The translations under genes were made by a program, and so were the position numbers. This document shows, piece by piece, positions 4,213 to 58,950 of a DNA stretch of 64,000 nt. The notes below the pieces were generated by a model. The model was not told where the DNA came from. It worked only from the letters and a program-made list of their open reading frames with translations, and made no database searches. Location: IMG/VR virus record IMGVR_UViG_3300001782_000005, positions 213,132 through 277,131 of that record, one strand, 5' to 3'. Position 1 is the first letter of the stretch; the number at the start of each line of letters is the position of its first letter.

Positions 4213-4562
4213 TTGATATCCCTCCATCTGATAACACCGGTCTCCTTATCGGGTTTGACGTTTTTCCATTCAATTTTTGATTTCTTGTTATCCTCGGGTA
4301 AGAGATCGAAGATTTCTCTAAAACTTAGAGTCTTTACACCGCTGTCTGAAAAGTAATATAGGACCACCTTATCTAGAGTTCCTCCACGAGTTGCTGCATG
4401 CTTCTTTGCTTCATCGCTTTTAATTAAATTGAGGTACTCCATAGCAACAGCGAGTTTTGACGATAAATATACATGCTCATCTGTTAAGTCCTCAGGTCCC
4501 ATTCTTTTATTGAGACAGAATTCACCAACGACTGCCAAAGCGGCTTCTTTTTTTGTAAGCAT
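4209..4562 (-). CDS. Hypothetical protein
   Basis: ORF with RBS AAGGAGG in a minus-strand operon. Confidence 0.6.
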   Translation of the reverse strand: MLTKKEAALAVVGEFCLNKRMGPEDLTDEHVYLSSKLAVAMEYLNLIKSDEAKKHAATRGGTLDKVVLYYFSDSGVKTLSFREIFDLLPEDNKKSKIEWKNVKPDKETGVIRWRDIK

Positions 4563-4565
4563 AGG

Positions 4566-4868
4566 TTACCCCTCCTTTTTCCCTAACCCACGACAGCAAA
4601 GATCGTGGTAGTTACAATCATCTCTTCCACACACCTCGACAGCTCGTTTGAAGCAATCTTCGAATCCGTTCTTTATCTGCTTTGCTCGTACATAGTCAGT
4701 GATACATTGATCACAGAGACCTCCTGATAGATGGTGGTTATTATTGCCTTTGGTAAAAATCTTATTTATCCATTTTTCTTGCAGATTAAGAAGGAATATT
4801 TTGACGAGGCTATGATTCTCAACGTTAACCGACCAAGTATATTTACATTTTACACATACGTACTTCAT
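4566..4868 (-). CDS. Cys-rich putative zinc-binding protein
   Basis: CxxC pairs; start MKYVCVKC after AAAGGAGG. Confidence 0.6.
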   Translation of the reverse strand: MKYVCVKCKYTWSVNVENHSLVKIFLLNLQEKWINKIFTKGNNNHHLSGGLCDQCITDYVRAKQIKNGFEDCFKRAVEVCGRDDCNYHDLCCRGLGKKEG

Positions 4869-4941
4869 AAATAATAACCTCCTTTCCAAAATGTTTTATC
4901 TTAATAAGTTATATATATAGCAGGAGGTTTTTTATATAACC

Positions 4942-4982
4942 AAAAAAAAGACCTCAAGTATATTAATAACTTGGGGTCTTTA
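4942..4982 (-). terminator. Intrinsic terminator downstream of the tas-like gene
   Basis: AAAAAAAAGACCTCAAGT...ACTTGGGGTCTTT hairpin with a T-tract on the minus strand. Confidence 0.75.
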
Positions 4983-5003
4983 AGGAAAGTGAGAAATGGT
5001 GAC

Positions 5004-6167
5004 TCACCTAGAATGTACGATACCCAATTTTTCTTCTTCATATGGAGCGGATATCGGTAGTCCTTCTAACTCCCTCCACTTCCTCCAGAAGTCAAGAAGA
5101 AATATTTTGAGCATATAGCGAATACTCATATTCTTTATATGGTTATCGCTTATGATATTACTCAAGACAAACTTCTTTGCTTCTTTTAGAGTTGGTTGTT
5201 TTTTCTGTTTTGCCAACCATTTCTTACATAACTCATATTTCTCAGAGTTAATGGTCAGGGTTCCCTCAGAATCATGGGGGTCTTTTTTATAGAGGATTTG
5301 TTTTTGCCTTAGAGCTCTTATGAAGAACTCCCTTCTTCCCTGCATTCTAGTTCTGTAATCATAGAAAATAGGTGAATAAATATTATCTTGCTTACGAAGG
5401 AAACTGGTTGCCAGGACATGGAGTTTTGTTTTTAGGTATGGGGAATATGTTATACTCTTCTTTGTTTTGGTTTTACCAGACTTATCTGTATATTCCCTAT
5501 CGACTAAGTGGTGAGATTTCTTACTTCTACCTTCTCCTCTGACAACCTCTTCACCTTCGATCTCATCTAGAGTCCATACCACGTCAAGACCAGCATAACT
5601 CCAAAATGCGGTGACATGGTTTGCCCTATGAGGATCAAGTTCGCTCACAAGAACGCCGCCCATTGTAGGACCAACTCCTTCAAGTCCTTTCAGGAATTCT
5701 GTCCAGATTGGAAACTCATCAAGAAATTTCTCAATTTGCTTATTGATCTTGTACTCCTGTTTGACAAGAGATATATAGGTGTCAACAAATATAAACATAA
5801 TTTCACCAGAGATTATACCAGGGTGTGCATCCTTCATAATCTTAGGAATCTCTTTCATGTTTATCACAACACCGTCAGTGATTCTCTTGTATTCTCTAGA
5901 GATAAGTCCCATTAACTCTTTTGGGAGACCATAAAGACCTTCTTTCTTTTCTCCCGGTTTTAGTCCAAAGCGACGATATAGATTACCAAGAATCCTATTT
6001 CCCATCCTGATCCTATCCCTCTGAATATCGTCATATCCTCTAATTAATCCTCTCAATTCAATCTTTGGACTCCACAACTCAGGTACAGGTTGCACAGGTA
6101 TGCTAAAACCTCTGCCCTTGAAAACATCTGCGATTGATTTTATAGGTTCTAAAACTTCCTTAGCCAT
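5004..6167 (-). CDS. TIGR-associated (Tas)-like IS110/Nop-fold RNA-binding protein without a recognisable nuclease domain (TasA-like)
   Basis: Coiled coil LRGLIRGYDDIQRDRIRMGNR and IS110/IS116-type core LKGLEGVGPTMGGVLVSELD...FWSYAGL. No N-terminal DEDD RuvC domain and no HNH motif. Directly downstream of the dual-spacer array. Confidence 0.85.
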   Translation of the reverse strand: MAKEVLEPIKSIADVFKGRGFSIPVQPVPELWSPKIELRGLIRGYDDIQRDRIRMGNRILGNLYRRFGLKPGEKKEGLYGLPKELMGLISREYKRITDGVVINMKEIPKIMKDAHPGIISGEIMFIFVDTYISLVKQEYKINKQIEKFLDEFPIWTEFLKGLEGVGPTMGGVLVSELDPHRANHVTAFWSYAGLDVVWTLDEIEGEEVVRGEGRSKKSHHLVDREYTDKSGKTKTKKSITYSPYLKTKLHVLATSFLRKQDNIYSPIFYDYRTRMQGRREFFIRALRQKQILYKKDPHDSEGTLTINSEKYELCKKWLAKQKKQPTLKEAKKFVLSNIISDNHIKNMSIRYMLKIFLLDFWRKWRELEGLPISAPYEEEKLGIVHSR

Positions 6168-6179
6168 AACACTTCTCCT

Positions 6180-7706
6180 TGGTTCACTATATATATATGG
6201 GATTCTTTAATTCGATGGTTCACTCTACGTGCCGGTACGTCTCGATTCTTTGGAATCGGAAACACGCTTCTCTTGGTACACTACAATTTATTGATTTTTC
6301 TTATTCCTTGGTACACTTTTTCTTCTAGATTTTTTAAGAGATATAGGTTCACTCATGTTCGTTGGATACTGCGGACTTCTGGTTCACTCCGGATGTTTGA
6401 ATTTTATCAAATGATGGTTCACTGCCAACAAATGGTTTTTCCTTGCCAATACGGTTCACTTTTGAGTTCTGATTTTTTTGTGCTTGAAGGTCCACTTTAT
6501 AGAAATGGGTTGCTGTAATTACATGGTTTACTAACACCCACAGGATTTCTCCCAATTCTAGGTTCACTTTTTTCTTCGGAATATTCTCCCCCACCTGGTT
6601 CACTTATCGTCTTAGGTTGTTTATCCATTCCGGGTTCACTCGGCAATTGGGTTTTTACTACGTAACTTGGTCCACTCCAACGCGCTGGGTTTCTGCGAGA
6701 GGACGGTTCACTCTTTTTTCAGGTTAATCTCCCCCACTTGGTTCACTCAAATTTTTGGGTTTCTGACATTTTATGGTCCACTCCGTGTCGCTGGATTCCT
6801 CTGCTCCCTGTTGGTTCACTATTCAAAAATTGGTTTTTTTCCTTAGATTGGTTCACTCCGGCGCACTGGGTTTCTGTTGCTGGGTGGTTCACTTGGTGAA
6901 TGTGAATTATTACAGGGGAATGGTCCACTTTATCATATTAGATTTTTTTCGTCGTTGGTTCACTTTGAAAAATGGGTTTGCATGACTTTTTGGGTTCACT
7001 CAGTCATCATGAATAACTGCCTTCAACTGGTTCACTGCAGCTCCCAGGTTTTCTCCGGGCTTATTGGTTCACTGGACTATAATGGTTTAGCTGTAGACTT
7101 TGGTTCACTTTCATGTACGGGATTTTCTAGCCAACGTAGGTACACTCCTTGCATCGGTTACCTGATATGCTATGGTTCACTTAACAATGATGATTTTTTG
7201 TGTCTTTATCTGGTTCACTTTCCAACGATGGGTTACTTCGCCAAAACGGTCCACTCAAAAATCCTGGTCTTCTGGCCTCGCTTGGTTCACACTAATTTCG
7301 GATTGGTACACTCTAAGGTGCCCTGCACCGACTGGTTTTTTACACTTTCCTTGAATGGTTTTCTCGCCCAGACCGGTTCATTCCCGTTTTCTGGTTATTA
7401 TCCTCACTTCTGATTCACTCGCCACGTCTGAGTTTTTTGATCACTACTGGTTCACTTTCGTCATTTGATTTCTGCTCAATTTTGGTTCACTTAAGATTCT
7501 TAGATACTTCTTTATCTTGGTTCACTAGACTGATTGGATTAATTGTACCACAGGTTCACTCGGCGGGTATGAATTTTTCTGGATGCATGGTTCACTCATT
7601 CTGTTTAGATACTGATAAAGTTAGGTTCACTGAGGTTAGGAGGGTTCCTATTTCTCTCCTTTGGTTCACTCTCTCGCTCAGGTAATCTGTTTCACGATGG
7701 TTCACT
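6180..7706 (-). repeat. TIGR-like tandem interspaced guide-RNA array (~42 units, ~36-nt period)
   Basis: About 43 copies of TGGTTCACT (minus strand AGTGAACCA; variants GGTCCACT, GGTACACT), almost all 34-39 nt apart (6181, 6217, 6275, 6310, 6346, 6381 ... 7663, 7699). Each unit is 9-nt spacer + degenerate second repeat (minus strand e.g. AGAAACCCA, AGAATCCCA) + 9-nt spacer. Confidence 0.9.
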
Positions 7707-7723
7707 TTGCAGAATAAATTACT

Positions 7724-7756
7724 AAAAAAAAGTACTCATAACGAGTACCTTTTTTT
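7724..7756. terminator. Bidirectional terminator-like hairpin between the tRNA-like RNA and the array
   Basis: A-tract-GTACTC-ATAAC-GAGTAC-T-tract. Confidence 0.65.
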
Positions 7757-7762
7757 CTAAAG

Positions 7763-7907
7763 GGTGGTAGGGGGTGGGAATCGAACCCAAAGACGGTATT
7801 GGCAGTTGAAAGGAGGAAAGACCGCCAACTTTGGAAAAGAGTCCTCCCGACCGTCTTGGATGGTGGTAGAACAACCATCCAGCATTCCGGTTGCCATTCC
7901 CCCTACC
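7763..7907 (-). ncRNA. tRNA-like structured RNA (~145 nt) with an enlarged variable region
   Basis: 9-bp acceptor stem GGTAGGGGG/CCCCCTACC + ACC; T-arm TGGG-TTCGATT-CCCA; D-like arm; 8-bp stem TGGATGGT/ACCATCCA; AGACGGT/ACCGTCT stem enclosing an anti-SD hairpin. Confidence 0.7.
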
Positions 7908-7945
7908 ATTAGAGTTTCCTGTGTATCTCTCATATGCGCCTCTCT

Positions 7946-8254
7946 CTAATTATAGGAAGAACGGCCTTCGGATTTGCTGTCTATTAGTCCGATATCCGAA
8001 AGTTCCAAATCAATCTCTGCTTCGATTCTTAATAATTCTAACTTATTATGGTACTTTATGTACACTTTTGTGGAAACAATTATTAGTGATATTCCACATA
8101 ATATCGAAATGACTGTAATACTATACCAATAGTATCCCAGTCTACTTACATGGATAAGGAGACCAATGACTGAACCAACAAACATTGATAACAGTCCAGT
8201 TATCCATGCGGCAACAGCTACTGCTGTGAGCACCACGTGTCTAAGTTTAAACAT
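7946..8254 (-). CDS. Membrane protein (2 TM)
   Basis: Hydrophobic segments; purine-rich RBS. Confidence 0.6.
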   Translation of the reverse strand: MFKLRHVVLTAVAVAAWITGLLSMFVGSVIGLLIHVSRLGYYWYSITVISILCGISLIIVSTKVYIKYHNKLELLRIEAEIDLELSDIGLIDSKSEGRSSYN

Positions 8255-8271
8255 AACATCCTCTCCCCTCC

Positions 8272-8445
8272 CTAGAAAACGGAGAAGCCCCCGTCTGTCT
8301 CCTTAGTTATTGTAAAAGTACCATGGTCTCTGGTACCGACTAACCAACTGTTAGAGGTCTTGAGATCAATTTTAATTACTTCAACTTTCTCGTTAAGATG
8401 TCTCCCTATCACATCTTCAAAGACTTTTCTCATGTTAATTAGCAT
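8272..8445 (-). CDS. Small hypothetical protein (57 aa, not in ORF track)
   Basis: Translated by hand as MLINMRKVFEDVIGRHLNEKVEV...; RBS GAGG; fills the operon gap. Confidence 0.45.
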   Translation of the reverse strand: MLINMRKVFEDVIGRHLNEKVEVIKIDLKTSNSWLVGTRDHGTFTITKETDGGFSVF

Positions 8446-8461
8446 ATTATTCCTCTACAAA

Positions 8462-8830
8462 TTAGATGTTGACTCTTGCTTCTCTGATCTTCTTTGACAA
8501 ATATTCCTTATTATTTGTTCTAAAGAAGATATCGAACCATTCATTGTCCAAATTTAAATTACTATAAAAATGACAGACAGTAAGGTTGTTTTGTCTTGCT
8601 CTCATGAGAAATCCACCAAGACTTGTAAGCAACCCTGAGGTTCCAAATGCTTTAGCAGCTTCTTCATCTGTAGTAGGCCACATTTCATTCTTTAATGCCT
8701 CTATTGTAAGTCTGACATTCTCAACATCATCTTCTGTATAGGTAAATACAGAATCAACATGATAAATCAATTCTCCTGTTTCAAGACTTTTACGTTCGTT
8801 AACTCGTAAACCAATTAGGTAGTGATACAT
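8462..8830 (-). CDS. Hypothetical protein
   Basis: ORF with GGAG RBS. Confidence 0.6.
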
Positions 8831-8840
8831 AGCTAACTCC

Positions 8841-8856
8841 AGAACAAAATATAAAT
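8841..8856 (+). promoter_or_regulatory. Putative phage late promoter RGAACAWA-N4-AAAT (representative copy)
   Basis: Copies at 1647, 8841, 9592, 15421, 15474, 29851, 38093 and 49820, mostly 35-70 nt upstream of plus-strand genes. Confidence 0.6.
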
Positions 8857-8882
8857 GCTCAAATCGAGAAAGGAGAAACTCA

Positions 8883-9587
8883 ATGAAATATCCCGAATTT
8901 AGCGAGAAGGGTGAAGTAATTTGTCAAGAGTGTGGAGGAGCCTACAAAGTATTAACTGGATCCCACACTCGGAGAAAACACAACATGTCTATTGATGAAT
9001 ATAAGGCGAAATATCCTGATGCACCAACTTCTGGAAAGATGTTCTCCTTAACAATGTCACAGGTACAATCTAAACCTGAGATTTTCAAAGAGAAACCTGT
9101 TGAAGTTGATTTAAACCAAACCGGTGAAGACGACGTAATTACTGACGACGAAGTATTAGATGATGAGCATGCCCCGACAATTGAAGAAATTCAAGAAAAA
9201 CTTCAAGATACAGATCTAAGCGATCTCTTCCAAAGTGATGAAGTTAAGGATCCTGAACCATATAATGTTGAGGATGAAGATGTTCGAAGTCCAAGAGATA
9301 AAATTCAAATTCTCAAATTTTTGAGACAGAAGTATCCCTTTATTCAGAACAACTATCTGATAAAGAAATTCCTCATGACAAATCATCTTGAATATGAATT
9401 TATCACAGATATGGCTGACCCTATAAATAAGATCGACTTTGAATTCCCAAATGCCTTTTGGCACAACAGGATGGCCTTTGAAGATCCTCGTAGAAATGAA
9501 AAATTGAAACGAGATGGTTGGAAGATTATCACTGTCAACTCAAGGGTTCCAAAGGTTAGTGAGGTTCAGAAACTAATTTCCAAATAA
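8883..9587 (+). CDS. Zinc-finger protein with a C-terminal Vsr/DUF559-like PD-(D/E)xK fold
   Basis: N-terminal CQEC...H...H finger, acidic linker, then [14 protein letters not shown]...[15 protein letters not shown]. Confidence 0.55.
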
Positions 9588-9667
9588 GTGTAGAACAAAT
9601 AACAAATTACTATCTCACTTAACGAGAAGAATTTACCACTCAGTTACGGGGTGATGCTAAAAGGGCG

Positions 9668-10243
9668 TCACCCCAATTTTTTCGTTATCACGTTGTTAGC
9701 TTTAGTATGTTTTAATTTCTTATGACTCTCAATGGCAGAGTCTATACATGCCTCTTTTGTTTCCTTATCTATAAGTTCAAGAACCTCTGTTTCCTTCAAT
9801 ATGAGTTCATCCGAATTAGAAGCTGTATTTACAGAATAAACCATTGAGAGGTTCTGAATCGTTATATACCTTGCTACCTCAGGATCTTGTTCTACTTCCC
9901 TGCAATAAATGTATGCCCAGTAAGAGTCCGTTATATACTTTCTTACCTCTGGGCGATTTTCGATCTCTTTACAATAATAGTATGCATCCTCTGGTTCGGT
10001 TATATATTTTCGTATGGTTGGATAATCCACACAGAACCTACAATAGAAATAGGCATATTCGGAGGCAGTTATTCGACGCCTGATTCTAATATCATCTTTA
10101 ACCCACCTACAGTATTCATATGCCCACTTTGGAGATGTAATTAAATTAGCGACTTCAAATAGGTTCTTTACATCTCTGCAATATTCATATGCCCACTTAG
10201 AAATCTGTTCTTCTTCTAACCAAAGGTTCATAATGTCGTCCAT
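9668..10243 (-). CDS. Tandem ~23-aa helical repeat protein
   Basis: Five repeats of (W/Y)AYxYCxxV/IxxxxxxRxxIT. Confidence 0.7.
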   Translation of the reverse strand: MDDIMNLWLEEEQISKWAYEYCRDVKNLFEVANLITSPKWAYEYCRWVKDDIRIRRRITASEYAYFYCRFCVDYPTIRKYITEPEDAYYYCKEIENRPEVRKYITDSYWAYIYCREVEQDPEVARYITIQNLSMVYSVNTASNSDELILKETEVLELIDKETKEACIDSAIESHKKLKHTKANNVITKKLG

Positions 10244-10317
10244 AAAAAAAATTAAAGTTGCCCTACTGACGAGCAGAGAAGACTCGTCAGTAGGGGTTAA
10301 TTGTCATATGAAGCTGG

Positions 10318-11100
10318 TTACTCCGCTAAAGGCTTCAGAGCAAACATTTGAATCCAGGGTTTACTCCTATATCCAGCCTCACCGCCGGAGAATCCGAAAC
10401 CACCGGAACCAACACCACCACTGTTCTGATTGTTTTTGGCAGTCTCAATCCATGCCTGAGTGTAGCTAAAACCAACGCCCCACCCGAAGGCCTTGATTAC
10501 ACGAGAATAACCTTCTGCAGTCAGAAACAACGTTTTGGCTCCCATGTCTAGAGCGGAAAGAGCAGCAGCCGCCAATACCTCCATTGAGGTTGAGTCTACA
10601 TTCTTGCTTGATACATAAATAAGACCAACCTGCTGAACGGGGTATGAAGGTCGCTTAATTATAATCTCAATGGTATCCTCAGCAGCTTTCTCGTCCTTCT
10701 TCTTTATAGGAACTAAGGATTTCGCATTGATCTTGATCCTACCGCCTGCCATGGCCTCCAGTTCAGCACGAGTCCACACCTTCTTGAAGAGCAACATAAC
10801 GCCTGCTTTCTGGAAGTTGTAGTCCTCTGTGGGCTGACCGAAGTACTGTGGATATCCGGGGTAATTAACATCGCCCGGTACCGGGAAGCTTCTGGGAATC
10901 TCCGAACCATACGTAGTGATGGTTGCACTAGGACTCCCACCTATCTGAAGTTGCGACTGCTCATTGTTGCTAAGGTTCTGGTTATCAACTTCATTAGCGT
11001 TGGAGTTGTCACCATTTGCAATAGCATCAGCGAAAACAGCAGGCGCACTCAGCACCAAGCAGGAAAGTAGTGCGACCAGAATGAATAGCTTACGCCTCAT
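10318..11100 (-). CDS. Secreted protein with signal peptide (real start MRRKLF at 11100)
   Basis: RBS GAAAGGAGG before 11100; signal peptide ending VFA-D; N/Q-rich N-terminus and Gly-rich C-terminus. Confidence 0.7.
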   Translation of the reverse strand: MRRKLFILVALLSCLVLSAPAVFADAIANGDNSNANEVDNQNLSNNEQSQLQIGGSPSATITTYGSEIPRSFPVPGDVNYPGYPQYFGQPTEDYNFQKAGVMLLFKKVWTRAELEAMAGGRIKINAKSLVPIKKKDEKAAEDTIEIIIKRPSYPVQQVGLIYVSSKNVDSTSMEVLAAAALSALDMGAKTLFLTAEGYSRVIKAFGWGVGFSYTQAWIETAKNNQNSGGVGSGGFGFSGGEAGYRSKPWIQMFALKPLAE

Positions 11101-11122
11101 AGGGTCTTTCCTCCTTTCCTGC

Positions 11123-11989
11123 TTAGAGACCGCCGAGTCCCTCATTATAGGTGATGGACCCGTCCAATACCGGGACCGATCCTGCGCTGTTGATGGTGAG
11201 TTTGGTATATGACTGAGATGCCTGTTGCTGGACTCCAGAAGCTCCAACAAGGACACCTTCGCCATCAAACACTGGCCGCTGTACCTGCTCTTGTATGAAC
11301 ACATTGTTCGCTTCAAGATCAAGATCAGCATCACCAACCATGCTTACTGCAGCGCCGACACATGACTCATGACCACCACTCTGCTGCATGGCCAAGAGAA
11401 CAACATTTTCCATCAACAGTTCGCCAGCTATTCCATAAGTTGGCATCCAGTCAATGTCAATGTCTATGTCAGTGTCAGAATCGAAGTCAGCCTCGACCTC
11501 GGTTTCTGATTCTGCTTCTGCTTCAGAATCGGACATAGCAAGGGCACCAGCGCCAGCAACGGCTCCTGAACCGCTCAGGGCACCAGCACCAGCTATTTCA
11601 ATAGCTTCGCCCTCTCCGCTAGTATTTGCATTAGCGGTTGCATCACTGTCTCCAGTAGCGTTTGCATTTGCATCCGCATCCGAATCAGAAGTTGCGGTAG
11701 AGTCTGCAGTGGCATCGCTGCTAGCACTGTAACTCTCGTCGATGTTGATGTCTACAATCAACTGATCATTGAACACAGGATTCCAGCTGAGACTGAGACT
11801 CTCAATTGAGAGATCAATCATGGACTGTTCGGCACAACAGGTTTCATGGTTGTTCCAAACAATACCATCAACTCCACTGGGTTGACCAATTGTCAGAGAT
11901 GCATCGAGATCCTTGGGCGGATCAGCGAGAGACGGTACCGCAAAGGAGACCAGTGCAACAGCCAACAGTATAGCTAAGACTTTCTTCAT
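11123..11989 (-). CDS. Secreted acidic Ala/Ser/Asp repeat protein
   Basis: Signal peptide (SLA-D); repeats such as SDATADSTATSDSDADANANATGDSDATANAN. Confidence 0.75.
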   Translation of the reverse strand: MKKVLAILLAVALVSFAVPSLADPPKDLDASLTIGQPSGVDGIVWNNHETCCAEQSMIDLSIESLSLSWNPVFNDQLIVDINIDESYSASSDATADSTATSDSDADANANATGDSDATANANTSGEGEAIEIAGAGALSGSGAVAGAGALAMSDSEAEAESETEVEADFDSDTDIDIDIDWMPTYGIAGELLMENVVLLAMQQSGGHESCVGAAVSMVGDADLDLEANNVFIQEQVQRPVFDGEGVLVGASGVQQQASQSYTKLTINSAGSVPVLDGSITYNEGLGGL

Positions 11990-12019
11990 GTCTTTTGCCT
12001 CCTTAATGTTTATGTAGGG

Positions 12020-12472
12020 TTAGTTAGTTGACGTTGATACAACTGAACTGGTGGATGTTTGTGTACTAGTTCCCGTTTGAACTCCGATATATCCGTTAGC
12101 TGCAAGACCAACTTGATTCTGCACATTGGTCTGATAAGCGTTAGCACCACCGGATGTAAACACACGAGTCTTATCTGTACAGTTGAGATCAGTTGTTGAT
12201 TGGATTACCTGAATGACTTCCTGATCGGAAATCTGACTCATTTCTGCATCAGCGGGCATGGCCCAATACTTAGCATCATAATCCAAACCGACATCTTCAG
12301 CTGTTACCGTAAGACCCTGAGCACGATTTTCAAGACGTGTGCTCTGATCGTACTCTTGATATATGACCTGCTTAGCATCCGTATTGGCATTGGTGGCACC
12401 ATCGTCCGCATAGACGGAACTAGTGAGTACGAAGACCAACACGAGAACTAGAAAGACTATTGTCTTCCTCAT
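12020..12472 (-). CDS. Secreted Gln/Thr-rich protein
   Basis: Signal peptide (VYA-D); RBS AAAGGAG. Confidence 0.75.
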   Translation of the reverse strand: MRKTIVFLVLVLVFVLTSSVYADDGATNANTDAKQVIYQEYDQSTRLENRAQGLTVTAEDVGLDYDAKYWAMPADAEMSQISDQEVIQVIQSTTDLNCTDKTRVFTSGGANAYQTNVQNQVGLAANGYIGVQTGTSTQTSTSSVVSTSTN

Positions 12473-12504
12473 GTGGTCACTCCTTTCTCAGTGATCGGAG
12501 GTTC

Positions 12505-13491
12505 TTATCGAGGGACGTTACATTCTAACACACCAGCTGCAGTGAAACTGCTAACTGACCCTGCTTGGTAACCGCCTTGAACCTGGCCAGCCACAACACC
12601 GTCTCCAGCCCAACTAAGGGTGGTACCACGGTGAGTTTCGAAAGAGCAGTTTTCAGCATAGGATCCGCTCATGGCCAAGGTTTCTGACTTAGTCTTGGTC
12701 TCATCCTTGGTCTCGGTCACACTCTTGTCCCAGCTCTCTGACTTATCTTTGGTCTCAGTTACACTTTTATCCCAAGATTCAGATGAGCTACCGGAACCTG
12801 AGAGATCGCCGGAGAAGGTGTGAGTATCTGTCTCGGTGACTGACTCTGACTTATTATAGTCACAGTCAGGGCAGTCAGAGTCTTCCTGAGTGTCGTTGTC
12901 AGTGAATGTCCCAGTTGAGGTTTCTGTCACAGTTTCCTCATCCGTACACTCTGCATTCGCAGCGATTTCAAATGAACCCTCACTGGAGGAGTCCTCATCG
13001 ACTACTTTGGTCTCAGTCTTTGACTCGACGTAATCTTCATCGACAACCTTGGTCTTTTCCTTGGACTCGGTCTTCGTTTCATCATACTGCTTGTCGAACG
13101 ACCAAGTACCATCTTTGGAACTTTCCATGGTGAAGTATTTGTCAATGTTGATTGAACCCTCACCCAAAGTGGCAAGTTGACCTTGACCATCAAACTGCAT
13201 GGCCTCACCCTGAGCGCTCTGCATGGTGAAACCACCCACAACAGCATCTTCACAGTCTTCACAGTCGATGGTTGCGGAGGTATCAGCCTCAAGCAGCATC
13301 TCTTTCTTGGATGATTGGAGCATTTCTCCACCGATAGTATCTCCACCCTCATTCTGAATGGCCTGGGCACCCTGGAATTGCTCATCAGTCATGCCCTGGT
13401 AGAGTTCGGCCGAACCACTGATATCTGCCAGCGCCGGGCCGGCAAAAATCAGCAGAACGATGGAAAGTAATACAATAACTTTCGTCTTCAT
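12505..13491 (-). CDS. Secreted acidic Ser/Thr/Glu repeat protein
   Basis: Signal peptide (ALA-D); 14-aa repeats SESWDKSVTETKD(K/E) and KTETKVVDED. Confidence 0.75.
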   Translation of the reverse strand: MKTKVIVLLSIVLLIFAGPALADISGSAELYQGMTDEQFQGAQAIQNEGGDTIGGEMLQSSKKEMLLEADTSATIDCEDCEDAVVGGFTMQSAQGEAMQFDGQGQLATLGEGSINIDKYFTMESSKDGTWSFDKQYDETKTESKEKTKVVDEDYVESKTETKVVDEDSSSEGSFEIAANAECTDEETVTETSTGTFTDNDTQEDSDCPDCDYNKSESVTETDTHTFSGDLSGSGSSSESWDKSVTETKDKSESWDKSVTETKDETKTKSETLAMSGSYAENCSFETHRGTTLSWAGDGVVAGQVQGGYQAGSVSSFTAAGVLECNVPR

Positions 13492-13604
13492 GTCTTTGTT
13501 CCTCCTTTCAAAGGGGAATTTAATTAGTTTGAAAAGTAAATACCTCTACCTCTAAAACCTACTTATGACCACCCCCTTCCATGTTTAGATTTGATCGCTG
13601 TTGA

Positions 13605-14147
13605 TCATTGAGAGAAGGATTGTTCCTTCTTGGGTTGTCTTACTTTATAATATGCATCACCAATAGCAACTAAAGGAAGCCCTTGGTTATCATAAAGGAT
13701 GGCTCTCAATTTTACAGTAGAACCAGGATCAACAGGACCATAGATGGTGACATAATTATTAAGTTTGCTAGTGGGTCCACTAACATACTCAACCTTCCTG
13801 GTGCGCCCCTTAAAGGGTTTAGACACGTCTAGCCACGATTGAACTTTATACTCAATGTTTTTCGGATTTTTGATCCAGGCATTGAGTGTTACGCCCTTGA
13901 CATTCTCAGGAAGATACATTTTTTCGTTGACCTTGAAATAGATTGGATATGGTTCTAACTCCTCTCCTCCAAGATCTTTCATTATCCACCCTGCAGCATA
14001 ATACTGAACCCTTATATCTACCTCTGGATCCGGGACCCTTAGATATTCTTGCTCATTACTCATAGGGTATCCGTCGACCAAAACAGTCATATTTGGCGCA
14101 CAGGAGACAGCAACAAAAATAAGTAACACATACATCTTACGCCACAT
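13605..14147 (-). CDS. Putative lipoprotein
   Basis: Lipobox-like FVAVS-C after a short signal. Confidence 0.6.
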   Translation of the reverse strand: MWRKMYVLLIFVAVSCAPNMTVLVDGYPMSNEQEYLRVPDPEVDIRVQYYAAGWIMKDLGGEELEPYPIYFKVNEKMYLPENVKGVTLNAWIKNPKNIEYKVQSWLDVSKPFKGRTRKVEYVSGPTSKLNNYVTIYGPVDPGSTVKLRAILYDNQGLPLVAIGDAYYKVRQPKKEQSFSQ

Positions 14148-14171
14148 AGGCGTCCTCCTTCCATTTTTTTG

Positions 14172-14801
14172 CTATCTCGGTTGTACTTCGTTTCTTGGAC
14201 TACCCGTTGATGGTGAGGATGCATAAGAACCGTTGCTGCCCTGGTTTGGTTGAGATGAACTATTTACAGATTGACCATTAGATGGTCCACTACCCGGGTA
14301 ACCTTTTGGGCAACCTGGACATACTACTTGTACTTGTGGGCAACAGGTAGTATGGCGTTCAAGCCAAATTTTGGTTATTCCTCCAACCTCTTGATGATCG
14401 GTTTTGGGATATTGAAGAGAAAACAGTTCATCCCTTGATTCTTCAACCTCGTCGTCATCTTCGGATTTTGGTTGATCTATGCATCTCGCTCGCATTGCTT
14501 GATCATATTGAGAGAGTGCAACCCCAGCCTTTTCTTTCTTGTCAATCGCTGCGAAGACTTGATCGCAGGTTGGAGTATTGTCAACGACAATCTTAGTGTC
14601 GATATCCGGGTCTTTGGTGTCATATTTGCCTGGTGGCAAACTTATGTTCTCGCCCGGATTGTCCATGGTAGGACTGTCTGCTTTCAATGGCAACTCAATC
14701 AACTCTATACCTGGGTCATGTACATTGTCTTCGGCTAAGGTAAAAGTTGATATTAATGCAATTGAAAGAATGATAAAAAATACTAGTAAGATTCTCCTCA
14801 T
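14172..14801 (-). CDS. Secreted protein
   Basis: Signal peptide (TLA-E); Cys cluster and Ser/Gly/Pro-rich tail. Confidence 0.7.
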   Translation of the reverse strand: MRRILLVFFIILSIALISTFTLAEDNVHDPGIELIELPLKADSPTMDNPGENISLPPGKYDTKDPDIDTKIVVDNTPTCDQVFAAIDKKEKAGVALSQYDQAMRARCIDQPKSEDDDEVEESRDELFSLQYPKTDHQEVGGITKIWLERHTTCCPQVQVVCPGCPKGYPGSGPSNGQSVNSSSQPNQGSNGSYASSPSTGSPRNEVQPR

Positions 14802-32123: not shown

Positions 32124-33098
32124 ATGGCGAAAAGTGGAGAACTCACAAACAAGTCTTTGGCAAAAAGAATTGATAAATTTATAGATAACCGAATTTTAGT
32201 TGTTGGTGATATAATAGTAGATGAATTTATATGGGGTCATGTCAAAAGAGTTTCCCCCGAAGCTCCAGTCCCAATAGTTAATGTTGAAAGGCGATCCATG
32301 ATGCTCGGAGGCGCCGGAAACGTAGTACATAACATTATTTCTTTGGGGGGAAATGCTACAATCTGTGGAGTAATCGGGAGTGATTCTACAGGATGGAAGT
32401 TACGAGAAATGCTTATAAGCATAAGCAGCCCTACCGACTATATTATAATAGATGAAGGAAGACCAACTACTGTAAAAACTAGAGTAGTAGCTCACTCTCA
32501 GCAAGTTGTTCGAGTCGACCTGGAAGATACAAAACCTATTAGCTCAGAATATACCAAGAAAATTCTAGATGCAATTACTGACCAATTACCAATACTACAC
32601 GCTATTATAATTGCTGATTATGGAAAGGGTGTTGTTACTCAAGAGCTTATGGACGGAATTCGCTCAATTATACCTAATGATCTTATTTTAGCAGTAGATC
32701 CTAAGGTACAGAATATAGAATTATATAAAGGGGCCACACTAATTACTCCTAATTCTTATGAAGCTAAACTTATGGCAAATACAGATACTATAGATGAAGC
32801 TGGTCGATTACTACTCGATAAACTTAATTGTAAGACAGTATTAATAACACGTGGGGAAAAGGGAATGACCCTTTTTGAAGATAATCAAATTATCCAAATA
32901 CCTACAATAGCAAGAAAGGTTTTTGATGTATCTGGAGCGGGTGATACTGTAATTAGTACCTTTACTCTATCGTTAGTCTCTGGACTAAACTCAAAGCAGG
33001 CAGCAATACTTGCAAATGCTGCAGCCGGTTTGGTGGTTGCAGAGGTTGGTACTGCTGCTATATCAGCAACTAGATTAAAACAATTTTTATTGGAGTAA
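32124..33098 (+). CDS. rfaE1: D-glycero-beta-D-manno-heptose-7-phosphate kinase (HldE kinase domain)
   Basis: ILVVGDIIVDEF, RVSPEAPVP, GGAGNV, DYGKG, ITPN, VFDVSGAGDTV. Confidence 0.92.
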   Translation: MAKSGELTNKSLAKRIDKFIDNRILVVGDIIVDEFIWGHVKRVSPEAPVPIVNVERRSMMLGGAGNVVHNIISLGGNATICGVIGSDSTGWKLREMLISISSPTDYIIIDEGRPTTVKTRVVAHSQQVVRVDLEDTKPISSEYTKKILDAITDQLPILHAIIIADYGKGVVTQELMDGIRSIIPNDLILAVDPKVQNIELYKGATLITPNSYEAKLMANTDTIDEAGRLLLDKLNCKTVLITRGEKGMTLFEDNQIIQIPTIARKVFDVSGAGDTVISTFTLSLVSGLNSKQAAILANAAAGLVVAEVGTAAISATRLKQFLLE

Positions 33099-33141
33099 GA
33101 GATGGATTATTATGAGACAATAATTGAAAAAGGATTAGAGA

Positions 33142-33642
33142 ATGCTGAACGATCAAGAAAAGAGAAGTCCGAAGATGGTGATAATGTGCGGACTACCGAA
33201 GAGCGGGAAATCGACAATAGTGGACCGAGAATTGCGGGAGTACCAAGTCATTTGTGGTGATGATATTAGACTTGCACTTGGAGTTGAATTTGATCCAAGA
33301 CTAGAAGAATTTGTGTGGGGTACATTTAATACAATGGTAAGAGCTAGTCTAATTAGAGGATTAGATGTAGTTCTTGATGGAACACATACAACAAGATTTA
33401 GAAGAGAAAGAGTTATTAATTTAGGGAAAGAATATGGAGCAGATATAACAATCATCCATGTAAAAACTCCATATGAAACTTGTATCAAAAGAGCAATCGA
33501 ATCAGACTTTCCACTAGCTGTCATGGAAAGGATGCGAGCTAATCTAGAGCTTGAACCTCCATCGGAAGAAGAAGGTGTAGAAGTAGTTGAGAAGAGTGTT
33601 GAAATTATTCACGGAGCTGTTGTAATAACTGGATACAATTAA
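33142..33642 (+). CDS. P-loop kinase (AAA_33 / polynucleotide-kinase-like)
   Basis: CGLPKSGKST, DDIR, VVLDGT. Confidence 0.8.
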   Translation: MLNDQEKRSPKMVIMCGLPKSGKSTIVDRELREYQVICGDDIRLALGVEFDPRLEEFVWGTFNTMVRASLIRGLDVVLDGTHTTRFRRERVINLGKEYGADITIIHVKTPYETCIKRAIESDFPLAVMERMRANLELEPPSEEEGVEVVEKSVEIIHGAVVITGYN

Positions 33643-33659
33643 TTAATTAGAGGATTATA

Positions 33660-33995
33660 ATGGTATATTGGATTACAGGTAGATCTGGGGCTGGTAAAAC
33701 AACTTTAGCAAAGCGTATTGCAAAACAAACAAATGGAATTATTTTAGATGGAGATAAAATAAGGGAATATTTTCCCTCTGATTTTACAGACGAGGGAAGA
33801 GAAAACAATATAATGCTTATAGCAAAATTTGCTACGTTATTAGAGGAACAGGGGTTTACAGTTGTAGTCGCTTGTGTTAGCCCAAAAAGAGAATGGAGGA
33901 GGAAGGCACAATCATTACTTAACGAATGTCTTGAAATTTGCCTTCCCTTTGGAGAATTATGGGAAGGAACTGACTATGAAGAACCAGAATATTAA
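33660..33995 (+). CDS. cysC: Adenylylsulfate (APS) kinase, short form
   Basis: WITGRSGAGKTTLA, LDGDKIR, F...R..N, YEEP. Confidence 0.8.
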   Translation: MVYWITGRSGAGKTTLAKRIAKQTNGIILDGDKIREYFPSDFTDEGRENNIMLIAKFATLLEEQGFTVVVACVSPKREWRRKAQSLLNECLEICLPFGELWEGTDYEEPEY

Positions 33996-34647
33996 AGTAG
34001 TAATTGCACCGTGGGGTGGTCATGCGACATCCCATATCCGTAGATTCATGGATGCGTATATGCGACCTGATGTGGTTCTTGGTGCTAATGGTGACATATG
34101 TCATATGCCAAAACCGACCATGCAAAAAGCATGGAAACATCGTACAGGAACCGATCTTGATATGAGTATCACTCTTAATGACAATTTAGTAAGATTTATT
34201 CATAACTCAAAAAAGCCAATTTTATTGAGTGGCGGAGTTTCCAAATTTAGTCCGTTTCTAACAATAAACTCAGTTAAAGCAATGTGTATTGTACGCAACC
34301 CTGTATATGCTTATTGTTCAATGTATAGTCGAAGGCATCCAGAAAAAGCTGAACCTTTTGGGGGAATAGATACAAAAGAATTAGCTATTTGGTATACAAC
34401 TAGATGGAATAATATCGTGTATGACTTTCTTGAATCAGGAAATCCTATTATCAGGTTTGAGCATTGGACTGATGATATGAAGCGCCAAGACGTTGGCCAA
34501 TTTAGAAAACTAATAAATTCTATAGATCATAGGAGAGCATCTACTAAAAAACCAATAAGTAAAGAAATAGAAGATTTAGTTATTAAAAGAACCAGAGAAT
34601 TATATGGAGAAATTAATAAATTTCATAAGCGCCTAAGAGGGAGATAA
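33976..34647 (+). CDS. Sulfotransferase-like protein
   Basis: IVRNPVYAYCS (3'-PB-like motif) and IIRFE; neighbours are cysC and sulfotransferases. Confidence 0.5.
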   Translation: MKNQNIKVVIAPWGGHATSHIRRFMDAYMRPDVVLGANGDICHMPKPTMQKAWKHRTGTDLDMSITLNDNLVRFIHNSKKPILLSGGVSKFSPFLTINSVKAMCIVRNPVYAYCSMYSRRHPEKAEPFGGIDTKELAIWYTTRWNNIVYDFLESGNPIIRFEHWTDDMKRQDVGQFRKLINSIDHRRASTKKPISKEIEDLVIKRTRELYGEINKFHKRLRGR

Positions 34648-34649
34648 TA

Positions 34650-35345
34650 TTGGGAGTAAAGATATTAGTAGTTGGTTTTCCAAGGAGTGGAACTACCCTT
34701 ACATACAGAGTTTGTAAGAAACATCCCCAAGTGGCGGGCATGTTTAATGAAGAACATATTCTAAGAAGTAGATCTTTACCGGGATTTCGATTTGTGAATA
34801 AGCAGTATTTATATAATAGGTACCCGAAATTCAAACTTAATTATGGAGAAAAACTAATTTATGAGAAAGGAGTTTTGGGTAAAAGGCATATATCAAATGT
34901 TACTGTAGTTGACTATTGTAAACAGTGGAATAAAACATTTGGAAAAGATTCAAGAATAATTCAAATAGTGAGACACCCCTTTGATTCTTGGAATTCAATT
35001 ATAAGGTTTAAATATAGGAGTCGAAGAATAGAGAAAGAAATACCAAGAATGTTTGATCAGTATCTTAAATGTATACCTAATTATACACAAGAAATTTCAG
35101 AATTGAAGACATGCTTAACTATCAAGTACGAGAATTTAGTTTTAAATTTTAAAGAGATCACTGCAAATATATATAAGCACTGTAATCTAGATCCCTTTAA
35201 TTATAGCGAAGTTGTAAGGACAGGAAGAGCCTTTAACTACAAGAGAAATGGTTTTGGACTAAAGGTTGATTCAAGACTTAATAAAGTTATTGATGTATTC
35301 AATAGATTCGATGGACCAAAATATGAGTTAGGAGATTCATCTTGA
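34650..35345 (+). CDS. Sulfotransferase
   Basis: VVGFPRSGTT, IVRHPFDSWNS, IKYENL. Confidence 0.85.
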   Translation: MGVKILVVGFPRSGTTLTYRVCKKHPQVAGMFNEEHILRSRSLPGFRFVNKQYLYNRYPKFKLNYGEKLIYEKGVLGKRHISNVTVVDYCKQWNKTFGKDSRIIQIVRHPFDSWNSIIRFKYRSRRIEKEIPRMFDQYLKCIPNYTQEISELKTCLTIKYENLVLNFKEITANIYKHCNLDPFNYSEVVRTGRAFNYKRNGFGLKVDSRLNKVIDVFNRFDGPKYELGDSS

Positions 35346-36130: not shown

Positions 36131-36131
36131 T

Positions 36132-36503
36132 ATGGAAACAATGGCTAAAATTATGACCTTTATAAAAGATTTTGGGATTGTCATACTAGCAGTCATCATA
36201 GGTATTATATTCTTCAGCATGAGAACTGAAACGTCAGAAATGTTAAGAAATCAATTCGAATATAATATGAGGCAACAGGAGAATATATATAAGCTAGTTG
36301 ACAGTCTACAAAATTTGGCTAAAGCACAGCAAGATTTTGTGACCAAATTCGAACAAAGAAAAGAAGTGGTACAAGAAATAAAAGTTGACTTAGGTAGATC
36401 AATACGAACGCTTAACAGAAGTGTTAAGGAGCTAAAAAATGTTCAAGATCCTAAAGAATCCTATACTCTTCTTGCTAATTCTTGGAGTTGGAGTCCTAAC
36501 TAG
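36132..36503 (+). CDS. Membrane-anchored coiled-coil protein (i-spanin-like)
   Basis: N-terminal TM plus coiled coil; overlaps a lipoprotein gene. Confidence 0.45.
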   Translation: METMAKIMTFIKDFGIVILAVIIGIIFFSMRTETSEMLRNQFEYNMRQQENIYKLVDSLQNLAKAQQDFVTKFEQRKEVVQEIKVDLGRSIRTLNRSVKELKNVQDPKESYTLLANSWSWSPN

Positions 36504-37026: not shown

Positions 37027-37035
37027 GAGAATATA

Positions 37036-58948: not shown

Positions 58949-58950
58949 AT

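What the first reader, a model, noticed from the sequence alone, without database searches (positions are those of the whole stretch)
7763..7907. tRNA-like RNA displaying an anti-Shine-Dalgarno loop with a perfect 16-nt match to a phage RBS
Seen: a minus-strand cloverleaf with a 9-bp acceptor and 4-bp T stem (9/4 geometry, as in archaeal/eukaryotic tRNA-Sec), a canonical TTCGATT loop, a non-canonical anticodon arm and a ~70-nt variable region. That region holds the hairpin GTTGGCGGT-[CTTTCCTCCTTTCA]-ACTGCCAAT, and an internal GGGAGGA could pair with its loop as a pseudoknot. Positions 7808-7823 are exactly complementary to the RBS region of the gene starting at 11100 (11103-11118), and 13 nt match the RBS of the gene at 13491. 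It lies just upstream of the guide array on the same strand, separated by a terminator-like hairpin. Inference: a tRNA-scaffolded antisense translational regulator, or a processing leader for the array. I do not recognise it as a named family.
Basis: partly seen in the sequence, partly recalled or inferred. Interest (0 to 1): 0.8.

Follow-up and report, generated by a model that had tools for sequence, protein, structure and literature searches.

The report
Phage tRNA-like RNA with anti-Shine-Dalgarno loop
A giant marine-sediment phage and its close relatives carry a conserved, tRNA-shaped non-coding RNA gene that cannot decode codons; its enlarged side arm displays a pyrimidine loop complementary to ribosome-binding sites, so it may be a natural tRNA-scaffolded regulator of translation, but its expression and function are untested.

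Summary
The element (minus strand, 7907-7762) is a real, conserved, structured RNA gene. I found 11 distinct versions in related T4-like jumbo phages. 97.6% of stem cells are paired, against 29-56% in shifted-register controls, and 6 pairs show compensatory changes. It has a 9-bp acceptor stem, a 4-bp T stem with a TTCGATT loop, and a D arm with the GG loop. It has no anticodon loop, so it is not a decoding tRNA, tRNA-Sec or tmRNA. Rfam and ARAGORN do not recognise it.

The 14-nt loop is almost invariant. Only two positions vary, both C/U, which fits pairing to G. The 16-nt match to the ribosome-binding site (RBS) of the gene at 11100 exceeds Shine-Dalgarno (SD) bias in this genome (0 of 400 flank-shuffled loops). 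It is lineage-specific, though: in sister phages the same RBS pairs no better than other strong SDs.

The element is not a general TIGR-Tas component (0 of 80 other Tas loci). A conserved terminator separates it from the array, and in all but the window's lineage a conserved leader does too.

Best reading (confidence about 0.4): an RNase P-released small RNA from the 3' end of an operon that pairs with SD regions. No RNA data exist. It is a new RNA family in a narrow clade.

The parts
7762..7907 (-). Whole tRNA-like RNA: acceptor 5' strand through discriminator A7765 and CCC 7764-7762.
   Evidence: Fold z = -4.09. CM R1 scores it 146 bits. 11 distinct homologues. Covariation counts.
7899..7907 (-). 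Acceptor stem, 5' strand (GGTAGGGGG). It pairs with 7766-7774 (9 bp).
   Evidence: 100% of cells paired in 11 sequences; only G-C/G-U and U-A/U-G changes.
7881..7895 (-). D arm: 4-bp stem GGCA/TGCT, with a 6-7-nt loop that carries the invariant GG.
   Evidence: Stem 100% paired. GG invariant in all versions.
7858..7880 (-). Closed hairpin at the anticodon-arm position (7-10 bp, loop 3-9 nt, no 7-nt anticodon loop).
   Evidence: 4 pairs with changes on both sides. Loop length and sequence vary. ARAGORN finds no consistent anticodon.
7790..7857 (-). Expanded variable arm: 8-bp basal stem AAGACGGT/ACCGTCTT enclosing the two modules listed below.
   Evidence: Basal stem 100% paired.
7842..7848 (-). 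SD-like purine run GGGAGGA. GGGAG is kept in all versions.
   Evidence: Alignments. Candidate pseudoknot with the loop: 88.6% of cells paired, no double-sided change.
7798..7829 (-). Hairpin with a 9-bp stem and the 14-nt loop CTTTCCTCCTTTCA (7820-7807).
   Evidence: Stem: 2 compensatory pairs (UA/CG/UG and CG/UG/UA). Loop: invariant except two C/U sites.
7808..7823 (-). 16 nt exactly complementary to the RBS at 11118-11103.
7775..7789 (-). T arm: 4-bp stem plus the TTCGATT loop.
   Evidence: Invariant loop; stem 100% paired.
7724..7756 (-). Intrinsic-terminator-like hairpin with A and T runs (reads as a terminator on both strands).
   Evidence: Conserved in all homologues except the deletion variant L142.
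11103..11118 (-). Candidate target: RBS of a 260-aa protein with a signal-peptide-like N-terminus (ATG at 11100).
   Evidence: Duplex energy -29.7 kcal/mol.
13499..13511 (-). Second candidate target: RBS of a 328-aa protein (ATG at 13491).
   Evidence: Duplex energy -23.7 kcal/mol.
6181..7706 (-). Neighbouring TIGR array (edge repeat AGTGAACC, modal unit 36 nt). Context only, not part of the RNA.
   Evidence: The 36-nt tigRNA unit is described in PMC12045711.
5004..6167 (-). Tas-like protein (387 aa). Context only.
   Evidence: PF02371 at 9.5e-06 and phrog_4285 at 1e-27. 341 homologues.

Best explanation
The element is a non-decoding, tRNA-shaped small RNA gene at the 3' end of a small operon of three ORFs (about 122, 57 and 100 aa).

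Shown:
- A conserved L-shape-compatible cloverleaf: 9/4 acceptor/T branch, D-loop GG, canonical T loop.
- A closed hairpin in place of an anticodon arm.
- A variable arm expanded into a 68-nt module that presents a nearly invariant 14-nt C/U-rich loop on a covarying stem.
- A conserved intrinsic terminator directly downstream.

Inferred:
- The RNA is transcribed with the upstream genes. In several lineages the upstream ORF ends 2 nt before it, which leaves no room for a promoter.
- RNase P cuts it free at its 5' end, and 3' trimming matures it around the conserved ACC. The tRNA fold thereby gives it defined ends and stability, as engineered 'tRNA scaffolds' do.
- The exposed loop then pairs with purine-rich Shine-Dalgarno regions (the GAAAGGAGGAAAG type) and blocks 30S binding. 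In this phage's lineage the loop and the RBS of the secreted-protein gene at 11100 match perfectly over 16 nt. The RBS of the gene at 13491 matches over 13 nt.
- The internal GGGAGGA may pair with the loop in cis, as a gate or pseudoknot.
For: Structure and constraint:
- 97.6% of cells paired against 29-56% in slid controls, with 6 compensatory pairs in 11 distinct sequences. An independent MAFFT alignment gives 96.4% and 5 pairs.
- Nucleotide identity to relatives is 79-83%, equal to or above the flanking coding genes at 68-80%.

Loop:
- 12 of 14 positions are invariant. The two variable positions are C/U only, as expected if their partners are G.
- The stem around the loop changes by compensation.

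Target:
- 16-nt perfect duplex of -29.7 kcal/mol, with 0/400 flank-shuffled loops reaching it.
- The next-best hit is also an RBS (13491, -23.7 kcal/mol), while non-RBS background in the window is about -21.
- All three differences between the window and the common sister version (window against L033) in this 16-nt duplex improve pairing in the window lineage: two in the RBS and one in the loop.

Processing:
- The upstream ORF abuts the RNA in the L033-, L037- and L138-type lineages.
- No sigma-70-like promoter is found.
- The terminator is conserved.

Not a tRNA.

Engineered precedent: the tRNA scaffold (PMC3753655) and hairpin-tagged variable arms (PMC7590224).
Against: - No RNA data: no RNA run could be listed, so expression, ends and processing are all inferred.
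- The extended complementarity is lineage-specific. Orthologous RBSs pair at -16 to -20 kcal/mol, like any strong SD, and at -8.7 in L004.
- Whole-contig scans of sister phages show no outlier target.
- In L132 the loop is identical, but homology stops inside the target gene.
- Most lineages have CCTTC or CCTCT rather than CCTCC, which weakens SD pairing.
- L142 has lost the T arm and the 3' acceptor strand, so the tRNA fold is dispensable in at least one assembled variant.
- All homologues are close relatives with the same synteny. The apparent co-improvement of loop and RBS was noticed because the match is perfect, which is an ascertainment bias.
Confidence: 0.4

Rival explanations
1. Ribosome or translation-factor decoy. 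The GGGAGGA run docks on the 16S anti-SD while the tRNA-like body occupies a tRNA site. Alternatively, the loop, whose CCUCCUUUC equals the 3' tail of many 16S rRNAs (my own knowledge), imitates that tail for a protein or nuclease. In this reading the loop and the GGGAGGA form a pseudoknot that shapes or gates the molecule.
For: - GGGAG is kept in all 11 versions and can pair with the loop over 5-7 bp in every lineage.
- A 13-bp acceptor/T branch and an intact elbow (D-loop GG, T loop) fit a tRNA-site ligand.
- No conserved trans target exists.
Against: - No compensatory change supports the pseudoknot. In the L037 type two of its pairs are broken.
- The exact CCUCC of 16S is kept only in the window/L132/L133 lineage, which argues against strict mimicry of the rRNA tail.
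- There is no start codon after the SD-like run.
Confidence: 0.15
2. A cis-acting processing and stability element ('tRNA punctuation' or t-element). It recruits RNase P/Z to end the upstream mRNA. By read-through of the terminator it may also give the pre-tigRNA a defined 5' end, as in plant dicistronic tRNA-snoRNA genes. The loop would then be conserved for a protein or for folding.
For: - It abuts the upstream ORF and lies 18-110 nt upstream of the first array repeat in every lineage.
- In the window only 18 nt separate the terminator from the first repeat, which leaves no room for an array promoter.
- Host-dependent tigRNA maturation is still unexplained, and tRNA-snoRNA precedents are cited in PMC12045711.
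Against: - A conserved strong terminator lies between it and the array. In every lineage except the window's, a conserved AT-rich leader does as well.
- 0 of 80 other Tas loci carry the element, and only 3 of 54 examined have any tRNA nearby.
- A bare processing signal would not need a 14-nt invariant loop on a covarying stem.
Confidence: 0.2
3. A chargeable but non-decoding class-II-like tRNA mimic: long extra arm, discriminator A, and a conserved CC after it. LeuRS or SerRS, which ignore the anticodon (my own knowledge), would aminoacylate it. It would then serve a non-ribosomal role or act as a sensor or decoy.
For: - A-C-C follows the acceptor stem in all complete versions.
- The elbow is intact and a long arm emerges at the variable position.
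Against: - The 13-bp branch and the 3-nt acceptor-D linker are atypical.
- No aaRS, CCA-adding or tRNA-repair gene was found among the 38 window ORFs scanned against Pfam.
- This reading gives no reason for the conserved anti-SD loop.
Confidence: 0.08
4. A decaying or hitch-hiking tRNA relic with no function. The RBS match would be chance plus SD bias.
For: - Narrow clade with shared synteny.
- One deletion variant, L142.
- No conserved target.
Against: - Stem substitutions are pair-preserving (97.6% of cells), with 6 compensatory pairs.
- The loop is nearly invariant although the stem around it changes.
- Identity is at or above that of neighbouring genes.
- The match exceeds SD bias.
Confidence: 0.05

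Closest known systems
Phage T4 species 1 RNA (rnaC) and species 2 RNA (rnaD)
   Same: Small stable RNAs of unknown function encoded by a T4-type phage. rnaC is 139 nt and folds with a canonical 5-bp T arm (GGGTTCGAATCCC) and paired ends around an expanded interior. It is a tRNA-like, non-decoding phage RNA of the same size.
   Different: No detectable homology: model R1 does not hit rnaC or rnaD. The T4 RNAs sit inside a tRNA gene cluster and have no anti-SD loop. Here there is no tRNA in 64 kb.
Engineered tRNA scaffolds and hairpin-tagged allo-tRNAs (PMC3753655, PMC7590224)
   Same: A functional RNA module grafted onto a tRNA body, so that the cell's tRNA enzymes process and stabilise it. PMC7590224 describes hairpin aptamer tags on allo-tRNA variants.
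   Different: Those are man-made. The classical scaffold replaces the anticodon arm, and the tagged allo-tRNAs still decode. Here the element is natural and the anticodon arm is a closed hairpin.
tRNA-Sec (Rfam RF01852) and allo-tRNAs (PMC5389517)
   Same: A longer acceptor stem with a shorter T stem, and a long extra arm. The 9/4 count equals that of archaeal/eukaryal tRNA-Sec.
   Different: - Rfam score 22.3 against a cut-off of 47.
- D arm is 4 bp with a 6-7-nt loop, not 6 bp with 4 nt.
- No 7-nt anticodon loop and no UCA anticodon.
- Allo-tRNAs have 12-bp branches (8/4 or 9/3), not 13.
tmRNA
   Same: A tRNA-like acceptor/T domain joined by a long helix to a pseudoknot-prone interior. It acts on ribosomes.
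   Different: - ARAGORN tmRNA mode finds none, even at a relaxed threshold, and Rfam gives no hit.
- No tag ORF and no G3-U70 pair.
- It is about 145 nt, against about 360 nt for tmRNA.
Trans-acting antisense RNAs that occlude an RBS (e.g. P22 sar, DicF; my own knowledge) and sRNAs derived from 3' UTRs
   Same: A hairpin-loop sequence complementary to SD regions. It lies at the 3' end of an operon, before a terminator.
   Different: Those RNAs are not tRNA-shaped and are released by RNase E or made from their own promoters. Here pairing with a specific target is not conserved across lineages.
Plant dicistronic tRNA-snoRNA genes and mitochondrial t-elements (references cited in PMC12045711; PMC1920247)
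   Same: A tRNA or tRNA-like unit next to guide-RNA genes related to box C/D RNAs, serving as an RNase P/Z processing signal.
   Different: Here a terminator lies between the two, and in most lineages an array leader too. The association is absent from 80 other Tas loci.

Membership tests
Canonical tRNA | Recognised by tRNA detectors and models. | tested here: not met
   ARAGORN finds 0 genes in the window. It finds none in 7 homologues with or without introns at default thresholds. Rfam at gathering threshold finds none.
Canonical tRNA | Anticodon arm with a 5-bp stem and a 7-nt loop carrying a conserved anticodon. | tested here: not met
   The arm is a 7-10-bp hairpin with a 3-9-nt variable loop. 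At a relaxed threshold ARAGORN calls Glu, Ser, Lys or Gly for different homologues.
Canonical tRNA | T loop TTCRANY, D-loop GG and paired acceptor ends (elbow and minihelix). | tested here: met
   TTCGATT and GG are invariant. Acceptor, D and T stems are 100% paired.
tRNA-Sec (RF01852) | 13-bp acceptor/T branch (9/4 or 8/5). | tested here: met
   9 + 4 bp with no unpaired base between them.
tRNA-Sec (RF01852) | Score above the family threshold, a 6-bp D stem with a 4-nt loop, and a UCA anticodon. | tested here: not met
   22.3 bits against 47, E = 0.22. The D stem is 4 bp with a 6-7-nt loop. There is no anticodon loop.
allo-tRNA (PMC5389517) | 12-bp branch in 8/4 or 9/3 form, with a functional anticodon loop. 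| tested here: not met
   The branch is 13 bp and there is no anticodon loop.
tmRNA | tRNA-Ala-like domain with G3-U70, a tag reading frame and pseudoknots; detected by ARAGORN or Rfam. | tested here: not met
   ARAGORN -m finds none even at 80% threshold. Position 3 pairs as U-A or U-G. No Rfam hit.
TIGR-Tas system component | Co-occurs with Tas genes and arrays across the family. | tested here: not met
   Model R1 finds nothing in 80 other Tas loci. tRNAs lie near Tas in 3 of 54 loci. No tRNA or tRNA-like leader is mentioned in PMC12045711 or in the 2026 TIGRFinder preprint.
TIGR-Tas system component | Part of the array transcript (no terminator or promoter between them). | tested here: inconclusive
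   A strong terminator lies between them in all lineages, and a conserved 65-nt leader in all but the window. In the window only 18 nt separate the terminator from the first repeat. No RNA data.
Trans-acting antisense sRNA | Complementarity to a target beyond chance. | tested here: met
   16 nt, -29.7 kcal/mol, 0/400 flank-shuffled loops.
Trans-acting antisense sRNA | Pairing with the same target conserved or covarying in relatives. | tested here: not met
   Orthologous RBS pairs at -8.7 to -19.8 kcal/mol, like other strong SDs. The target's RBS is not at the syntenic place in L132.
Trans-acting antisense sRNA | Expressed as a discrete RNA. | not testable with these tools
   No RNA run could be listed. 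Only DNA metagenomes hold the sequence.
T4 rnaC / species 1 RNA | Sequence and structure homology. | tested here: not met
   R1 does not match L049:2909-3047. The two share only the general design.

The most novel reading that the evidence does not exclude
A natural tRNA-scaffolded riboregulator. The tRNA body serves only to recruit RNase P, 3' trimming and CCA enzymes, and to stabilise the RNA. The grafted variable-arm module carries an anti-Shine-Dalgarno loop, gated by an internal SD-like run. That loop tunes translation of phage secreted-protein genes, or of strong-SD mRNAs in general. This would be the natural counterpart of the engineered tRNA scaffold and a new class of phage small RNA.
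Probability: 0.3. Interest if true: 0.75.

Novelty: new variant of a known kind. Interest (0 to 1): 0.57.

Why it matters
If the model holds, phages have independently arrived at the 'tRNA scaffold' trick of RNA engineers, using the host's tRNA-maturation enzymes to make a stable regulatory RNA that competes with the ribosome for Shine-Dalgarno sequences.

That would add a new design to the short list of phage-encoded riboregulators. It would give a testable function to the old puzzle of tRNA-like 'stable RNAs' in T4-type phages. It would also provide a compact natural part, a variable-arm graft site, for synthetic biology.

Separately, the analysis shows that the element is not a hidden component of TIGR-Tas systems, which matters for people annotating those loci.

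Tried and rejected
1. **tRNA with an intron.** ARAGORN with introns finds nothing at default thresholds. At a relaxed threshold it gives different isotypes for different homologues. Rejected.
2. **tRNA-Sec or suppressor tRNA.** The Rfam score is sub-threshold, the D arm is wrong and there is no anticodon loop. The window's ORFs are intact under code 11. Rejected.
3. **tmRNA or Y-RNA-like.** No ARAGORN or Rfam signal in the window or in 4 homologue loci.
4. **General TIGR leader.** 80 further Tas loci were fetched and searched with the model and with ARAGORN. Nothing was found.
5. **Wider homologues.**
   - Phage GenBank blastn and megablast: none.
   - Three IMG/VR pattern scans: only the same two versions, or unrelated tandem tRNAs.
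   - One GTDB genome scan: 2 unrelated hits.
   - One metagenome scan via the neighbouring 122-aa protein: 6 loci.
   - The extra versions came from exact-protein look-ups of neighbouring genes.
6. **Triple-helix reading of the mirror-symmetric loop.** The C-to-U changes are incompatible with C+.G-C triples but compatible with G-U wobble. Dropped (inference).
7. **Array spacers aimed at the tRNA-like RNA or its targets.** Only chance-level 11-mers.
8. **Function of the two candidate target proteins.** Pfam, PHROGs and the ESM Atlas were uninformative.
9. **Hairpins in the target leaders.** They are weak and no better than shuffles.
10. **Expression.** No RNA run could be listed. Read laying was not used, because only DNA contigs were on offer.

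Full report
**Context**

The window belongs to a ~277-kb uncultivated phage contig (IMG/VR UViG 3300001782_000005). It has a T4-type major capsid protein (PF07068, 8e-34). Relatives carry a T4-type portal and prohead protease. DNA runs that hold the region are marine-sediment and seawater metagenomes. No record in the phage GenBank collection resembles it at the DNA level.

On the minus strand the order is:
- a cluster of small genes, ending with ORFs of 122, 57 and 102 aa (8830-7946);
- the tRNA-like element (7907-7762);
- a terminator-like hairpin (7756-7724);
- a ~1.5-kb array of ~36-nt units that each begin with AGTGAACC (7706-6181);
- a 387-aa protein (6167-5004) with a weak IS110-type hit and 341 homologues.

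This matches the published description of TIGR arrays (36-nt tigRNA units) and Tas proteins (PMC12045711).

**Checking the observation**

Every stated feature is present at the stated place (coordinates are in the parts list). The 151-nt stretch folds into the described five-helix cloverleaf at -61.5 kcal/mol, z = -4.09.

The 16-nt complementarity (7823-7808 against 11118-11103) and the 13-nt one (against 13511-13499) are exact. Both sit immediately upstream of ATG codons that open proteins with signal-peptide-like N-termini.

**Is it a real, constrained RNA?**

Neighbouring proteins were used to fetch related contigs. A covariance model (R1) then recovered the element in every related contig long enough to hold it. 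This gave 11 distinct versions.

- On a plain MAFFT alignment of five versions, 96.4% of stem cells pair, against 39-62% when partners are slid. Five pairs change on both sides.
- On the 12-row model-fitted alignment, which leans towards the structure, the figures are 97.6% against 29-56%, with six compensatory pairs.
- The compensatory pairs lie in the two hairpins: four in the anticodon-position hairpin and two in the stem that holds the loop. One of the latter shows a stepwise C-G, U-G, U-A series.
- The acceptor, D, T and basal variable-arm stems vary only by wobble.
- Nucleotide identity to relatives (79-83%) equals or exceeds that of the flanking coding genes (68-80%).

Invariant features are the T loop, the D-loop GG, the discriminator A followed by CC, and 12 of the 14 loop positions. 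The two variable loop positions are C or U only: CCTCC in the window, L132 and L133; CCTTC in most lineages; CCTCT in the L037 type. This is the pattern expected when the partner bases are G.

**What it is not**

- *Decoding tRNA.* ARAGORN and Rfam do not call it. The only weak Rfam match is tRNA-Sec at 22.3 bits against a threshold of 47. The hairpin at the anticodon position has a 3-9-nt loop of variable sequence. Intron-allowing searches at a relaxed threshold give contradictory isotypes.
- *tmRNA.* No detector signal, no tag frame and no G3-U70.
- *Rfam families in general.* Nothing appears in four homologue loci either.
- *T4 rnaC or rnaD.* No homology. T4 rnaC does share the design: a 139-nt RNA with a canonical T arm and paired ends around an expanded interior.

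**Relation to the TIGR array**

- In all lineages a strong intrinsic terminator follows the RNA.
- In every lineage except the window's, a conserved ~65-nt AT-rich leader then precedes the first repeat. In the window this leader is reduced to 18 nt.
- Eighty further Tas loci from IMG/VR contain no match to the model. Only 3 of the 54 loci scanned hold any tRNA.
- The two TIGR papers I searched mention no tRNA-like leader.

The element is therefore a neighbour of the array in one phage clade, not a TIGR component. Read-through in the window's own lineage cannot be excluded without RNA data.

**The anti-SD loop and its candidate targets**

In this genome the loop region pairs with the 11100 RBS at -29.7 kcal/mol and with the 13491 RBS at -23.7. 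Other sites in the 64 kb reach about -21.

I kept the CCTCC core and shuffled the flanks. None of 400 loops reached -29.7 against 168 SD-bearing starts, and the best shuffle reached -27.9. The match is thus more than SD bias.

The pairing is not conserved, however.
- The orthologous RBS reads AGAAAAGGAGGTAAGACC in five lineages and pairs at -18.7 to -19.8.
- It has diverged in the L037 type (-16.4) and in L004 (-8.7).
- In these phages several strong RBSs of the cluster (the 328-, 267- and 100-aa genes) all pair at -16 to -20, with no outlier.
- Whole-contig scans show coding-region hits of equal strength.
- In L132 the loop is identical to the window's, but homology stops inside the target gene.

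All three differences between the window and the common sister version (window against L033) within the 16-nt duplex improve pairing in the window lineage: two in the RBS and one in the loop. This is suggestive, but the match was noticed because it is perfect.

The internal GGGAGGA can pair with the loop over 5-7 bp in all lineages. No compensatory change supports this, and two pairs are lost in the L037 type.

**Transcription and processing (inferred)**

No sigma-70-like promoter precedes the RNA. The TATAAT in the window and L004 overlaps the stop codon of the upstream ORF. In the L033-, L037- and L138-type lineages the upstream ORF ends 2 nt before the RNA. The simplest reading is co-transcription with the upstream genes, release by RNase P at the acceptor 5' end, and termination or trimming at the 3' end near the conserved A-C-C. 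None of this is shown, because no RNA run could be listed.

**Best explanation and rivals**

I favour, at about 0.4, a small RNA derived from the 3' end of an operon. Its tRNA body is a processing and stability scaffold, and its grafted arm presents an anti-SD loop that pairs with strong SD regions. In this lineage that pairing has been sharpened onto the 11100 RBS.

The rivals are:
- a ribosome or factor decoy built around an SD/anti-SD pseudoknot (0.15);
- a pure processing or punctuation element, possibly serving the array by read-through (0.2);
- a chargeable non-decoding tRNA mimic (0.08);
- a functionless relic (0.05), which the covariation and loop invariance make unlikely.

A deletion variant (L142) lacks the T arm, the 3' acceptor strand and the terminator, yet keeps the 5' two-thirds almost unchanged. 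This shows that the tRNA fold can be lost, at least in one assembled contig.

**Novelty and verdict**

The family is absent from Rfam. It was not found in the literature I could search. It is confined, as far as these tools reach, to one clade of marine jumbo phages.

It combines two known ideas in a way not described for a natural RNA: phage tRNA-like stable RNAs, and RBS-occluding antisense loops. The engineered tRNA scaffold is the nearest functional analogue (PMC3753655, PMC7590224).

I rate it a new variant of a known kind. Interest is about 0.57: the object is real and unusual, but the mechanism is only moderately supported, there are no expression data, and the distribution is narrow.

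Noticed in passing
window 6181-7706 (-) and 5004-6167 (-): A TIGR array of about 40 units (modal length 36 nt, edge repeat AGTGAACC, internal A-rich ..AACC/AATC motif). It lies directly upstream of a 387-aa Tas-like protein, about 90 aa longer than most of its ~290-aa homologues. The array contains irregular stretches of 144, 72 and 58 nt.
   Followed up: partly
window ~7672-7634 (-); L004 3709-3750; L045, L134, L037 and L138 arrays: One array unit (GTGAACC-AAAGGAGAG...AACCTCA) is conserved near the start of the array in all lineages, while most other spacers differ. Its first spacer is itself SD-like and purine-rich.
   Followed up: no
L004 5383-5665; L037 4982-5257; L138 9176-9451; L033 5046-5318: In sister phages a ~90-aa ORF is embedded inside the TIGR array, with repeats on both sides. 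The window's array has no such ORF.
   Followed up: no
L142 540-681: A deletion variant of the tRNA-like RNA. The T arm, the 3' acceptor strand and the terminator hairpin are missing. The 5' two-thirds are fused to the T-run and the array leader.
   Followed up: partly
L132 6880-6901 and L133 3100-3111: Two contigs from different samples both end inside the T loop of the element. L132 runs into an Illumina adapter sequence (AGATCGGAAGAGC...), so its end is an assembly or library artefact or a fragment end.
   Followed up: no
window 13499-13520 (-) and orthologues (L134 ~4700, L138 ~2105): The RBS of the 328-aa gene is preceded by a conserved pyrimidine run (TTCCCCTTT). This run can pair with its own SD as a small cis anti-SD hairpin. 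The predicted fold is weak (z -1.3 to -2.0).
   Followed up: partly
window 11108-11131 (-): The leader of the 11100 gene shares the 8-mer GGCGGTCT with the 5' arm of the loop-bearing hairpin of the tRNA-like RNA. It can hold its SD in the loop of a weak GGTCT/AGACC hairpin, which is not better than shuffles.
   Followed up: partly
window 4562-14801 (-): The extended SD GAAAGGAGG occurs at five places in the window, all on the minus strand. Three of them precede starts in the gene cluster next to the element (11100, 13491, 14801). The plus-strand genes listed use GGAGG without the GAAA extension.
   Followed up: partly
window 32124-37764 (+), 46623-47600 (+), 57007-61175 (+): Auxiliary-metabolism-like genes: a PfkB-family kinase, three sulfotransferases, two radical-SAM proteins (one with a SPASM domain), glycosyltransferases and an HD-domain protein.
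   Followed up: no
window 8883-9587 (+): A lone plus-strand gene inside the minus-strand cluster encodes a protein with a ROS/MucR-type zinc-finger regulator domain. It is conserved at this place in all related contigs.
   Followed up: no
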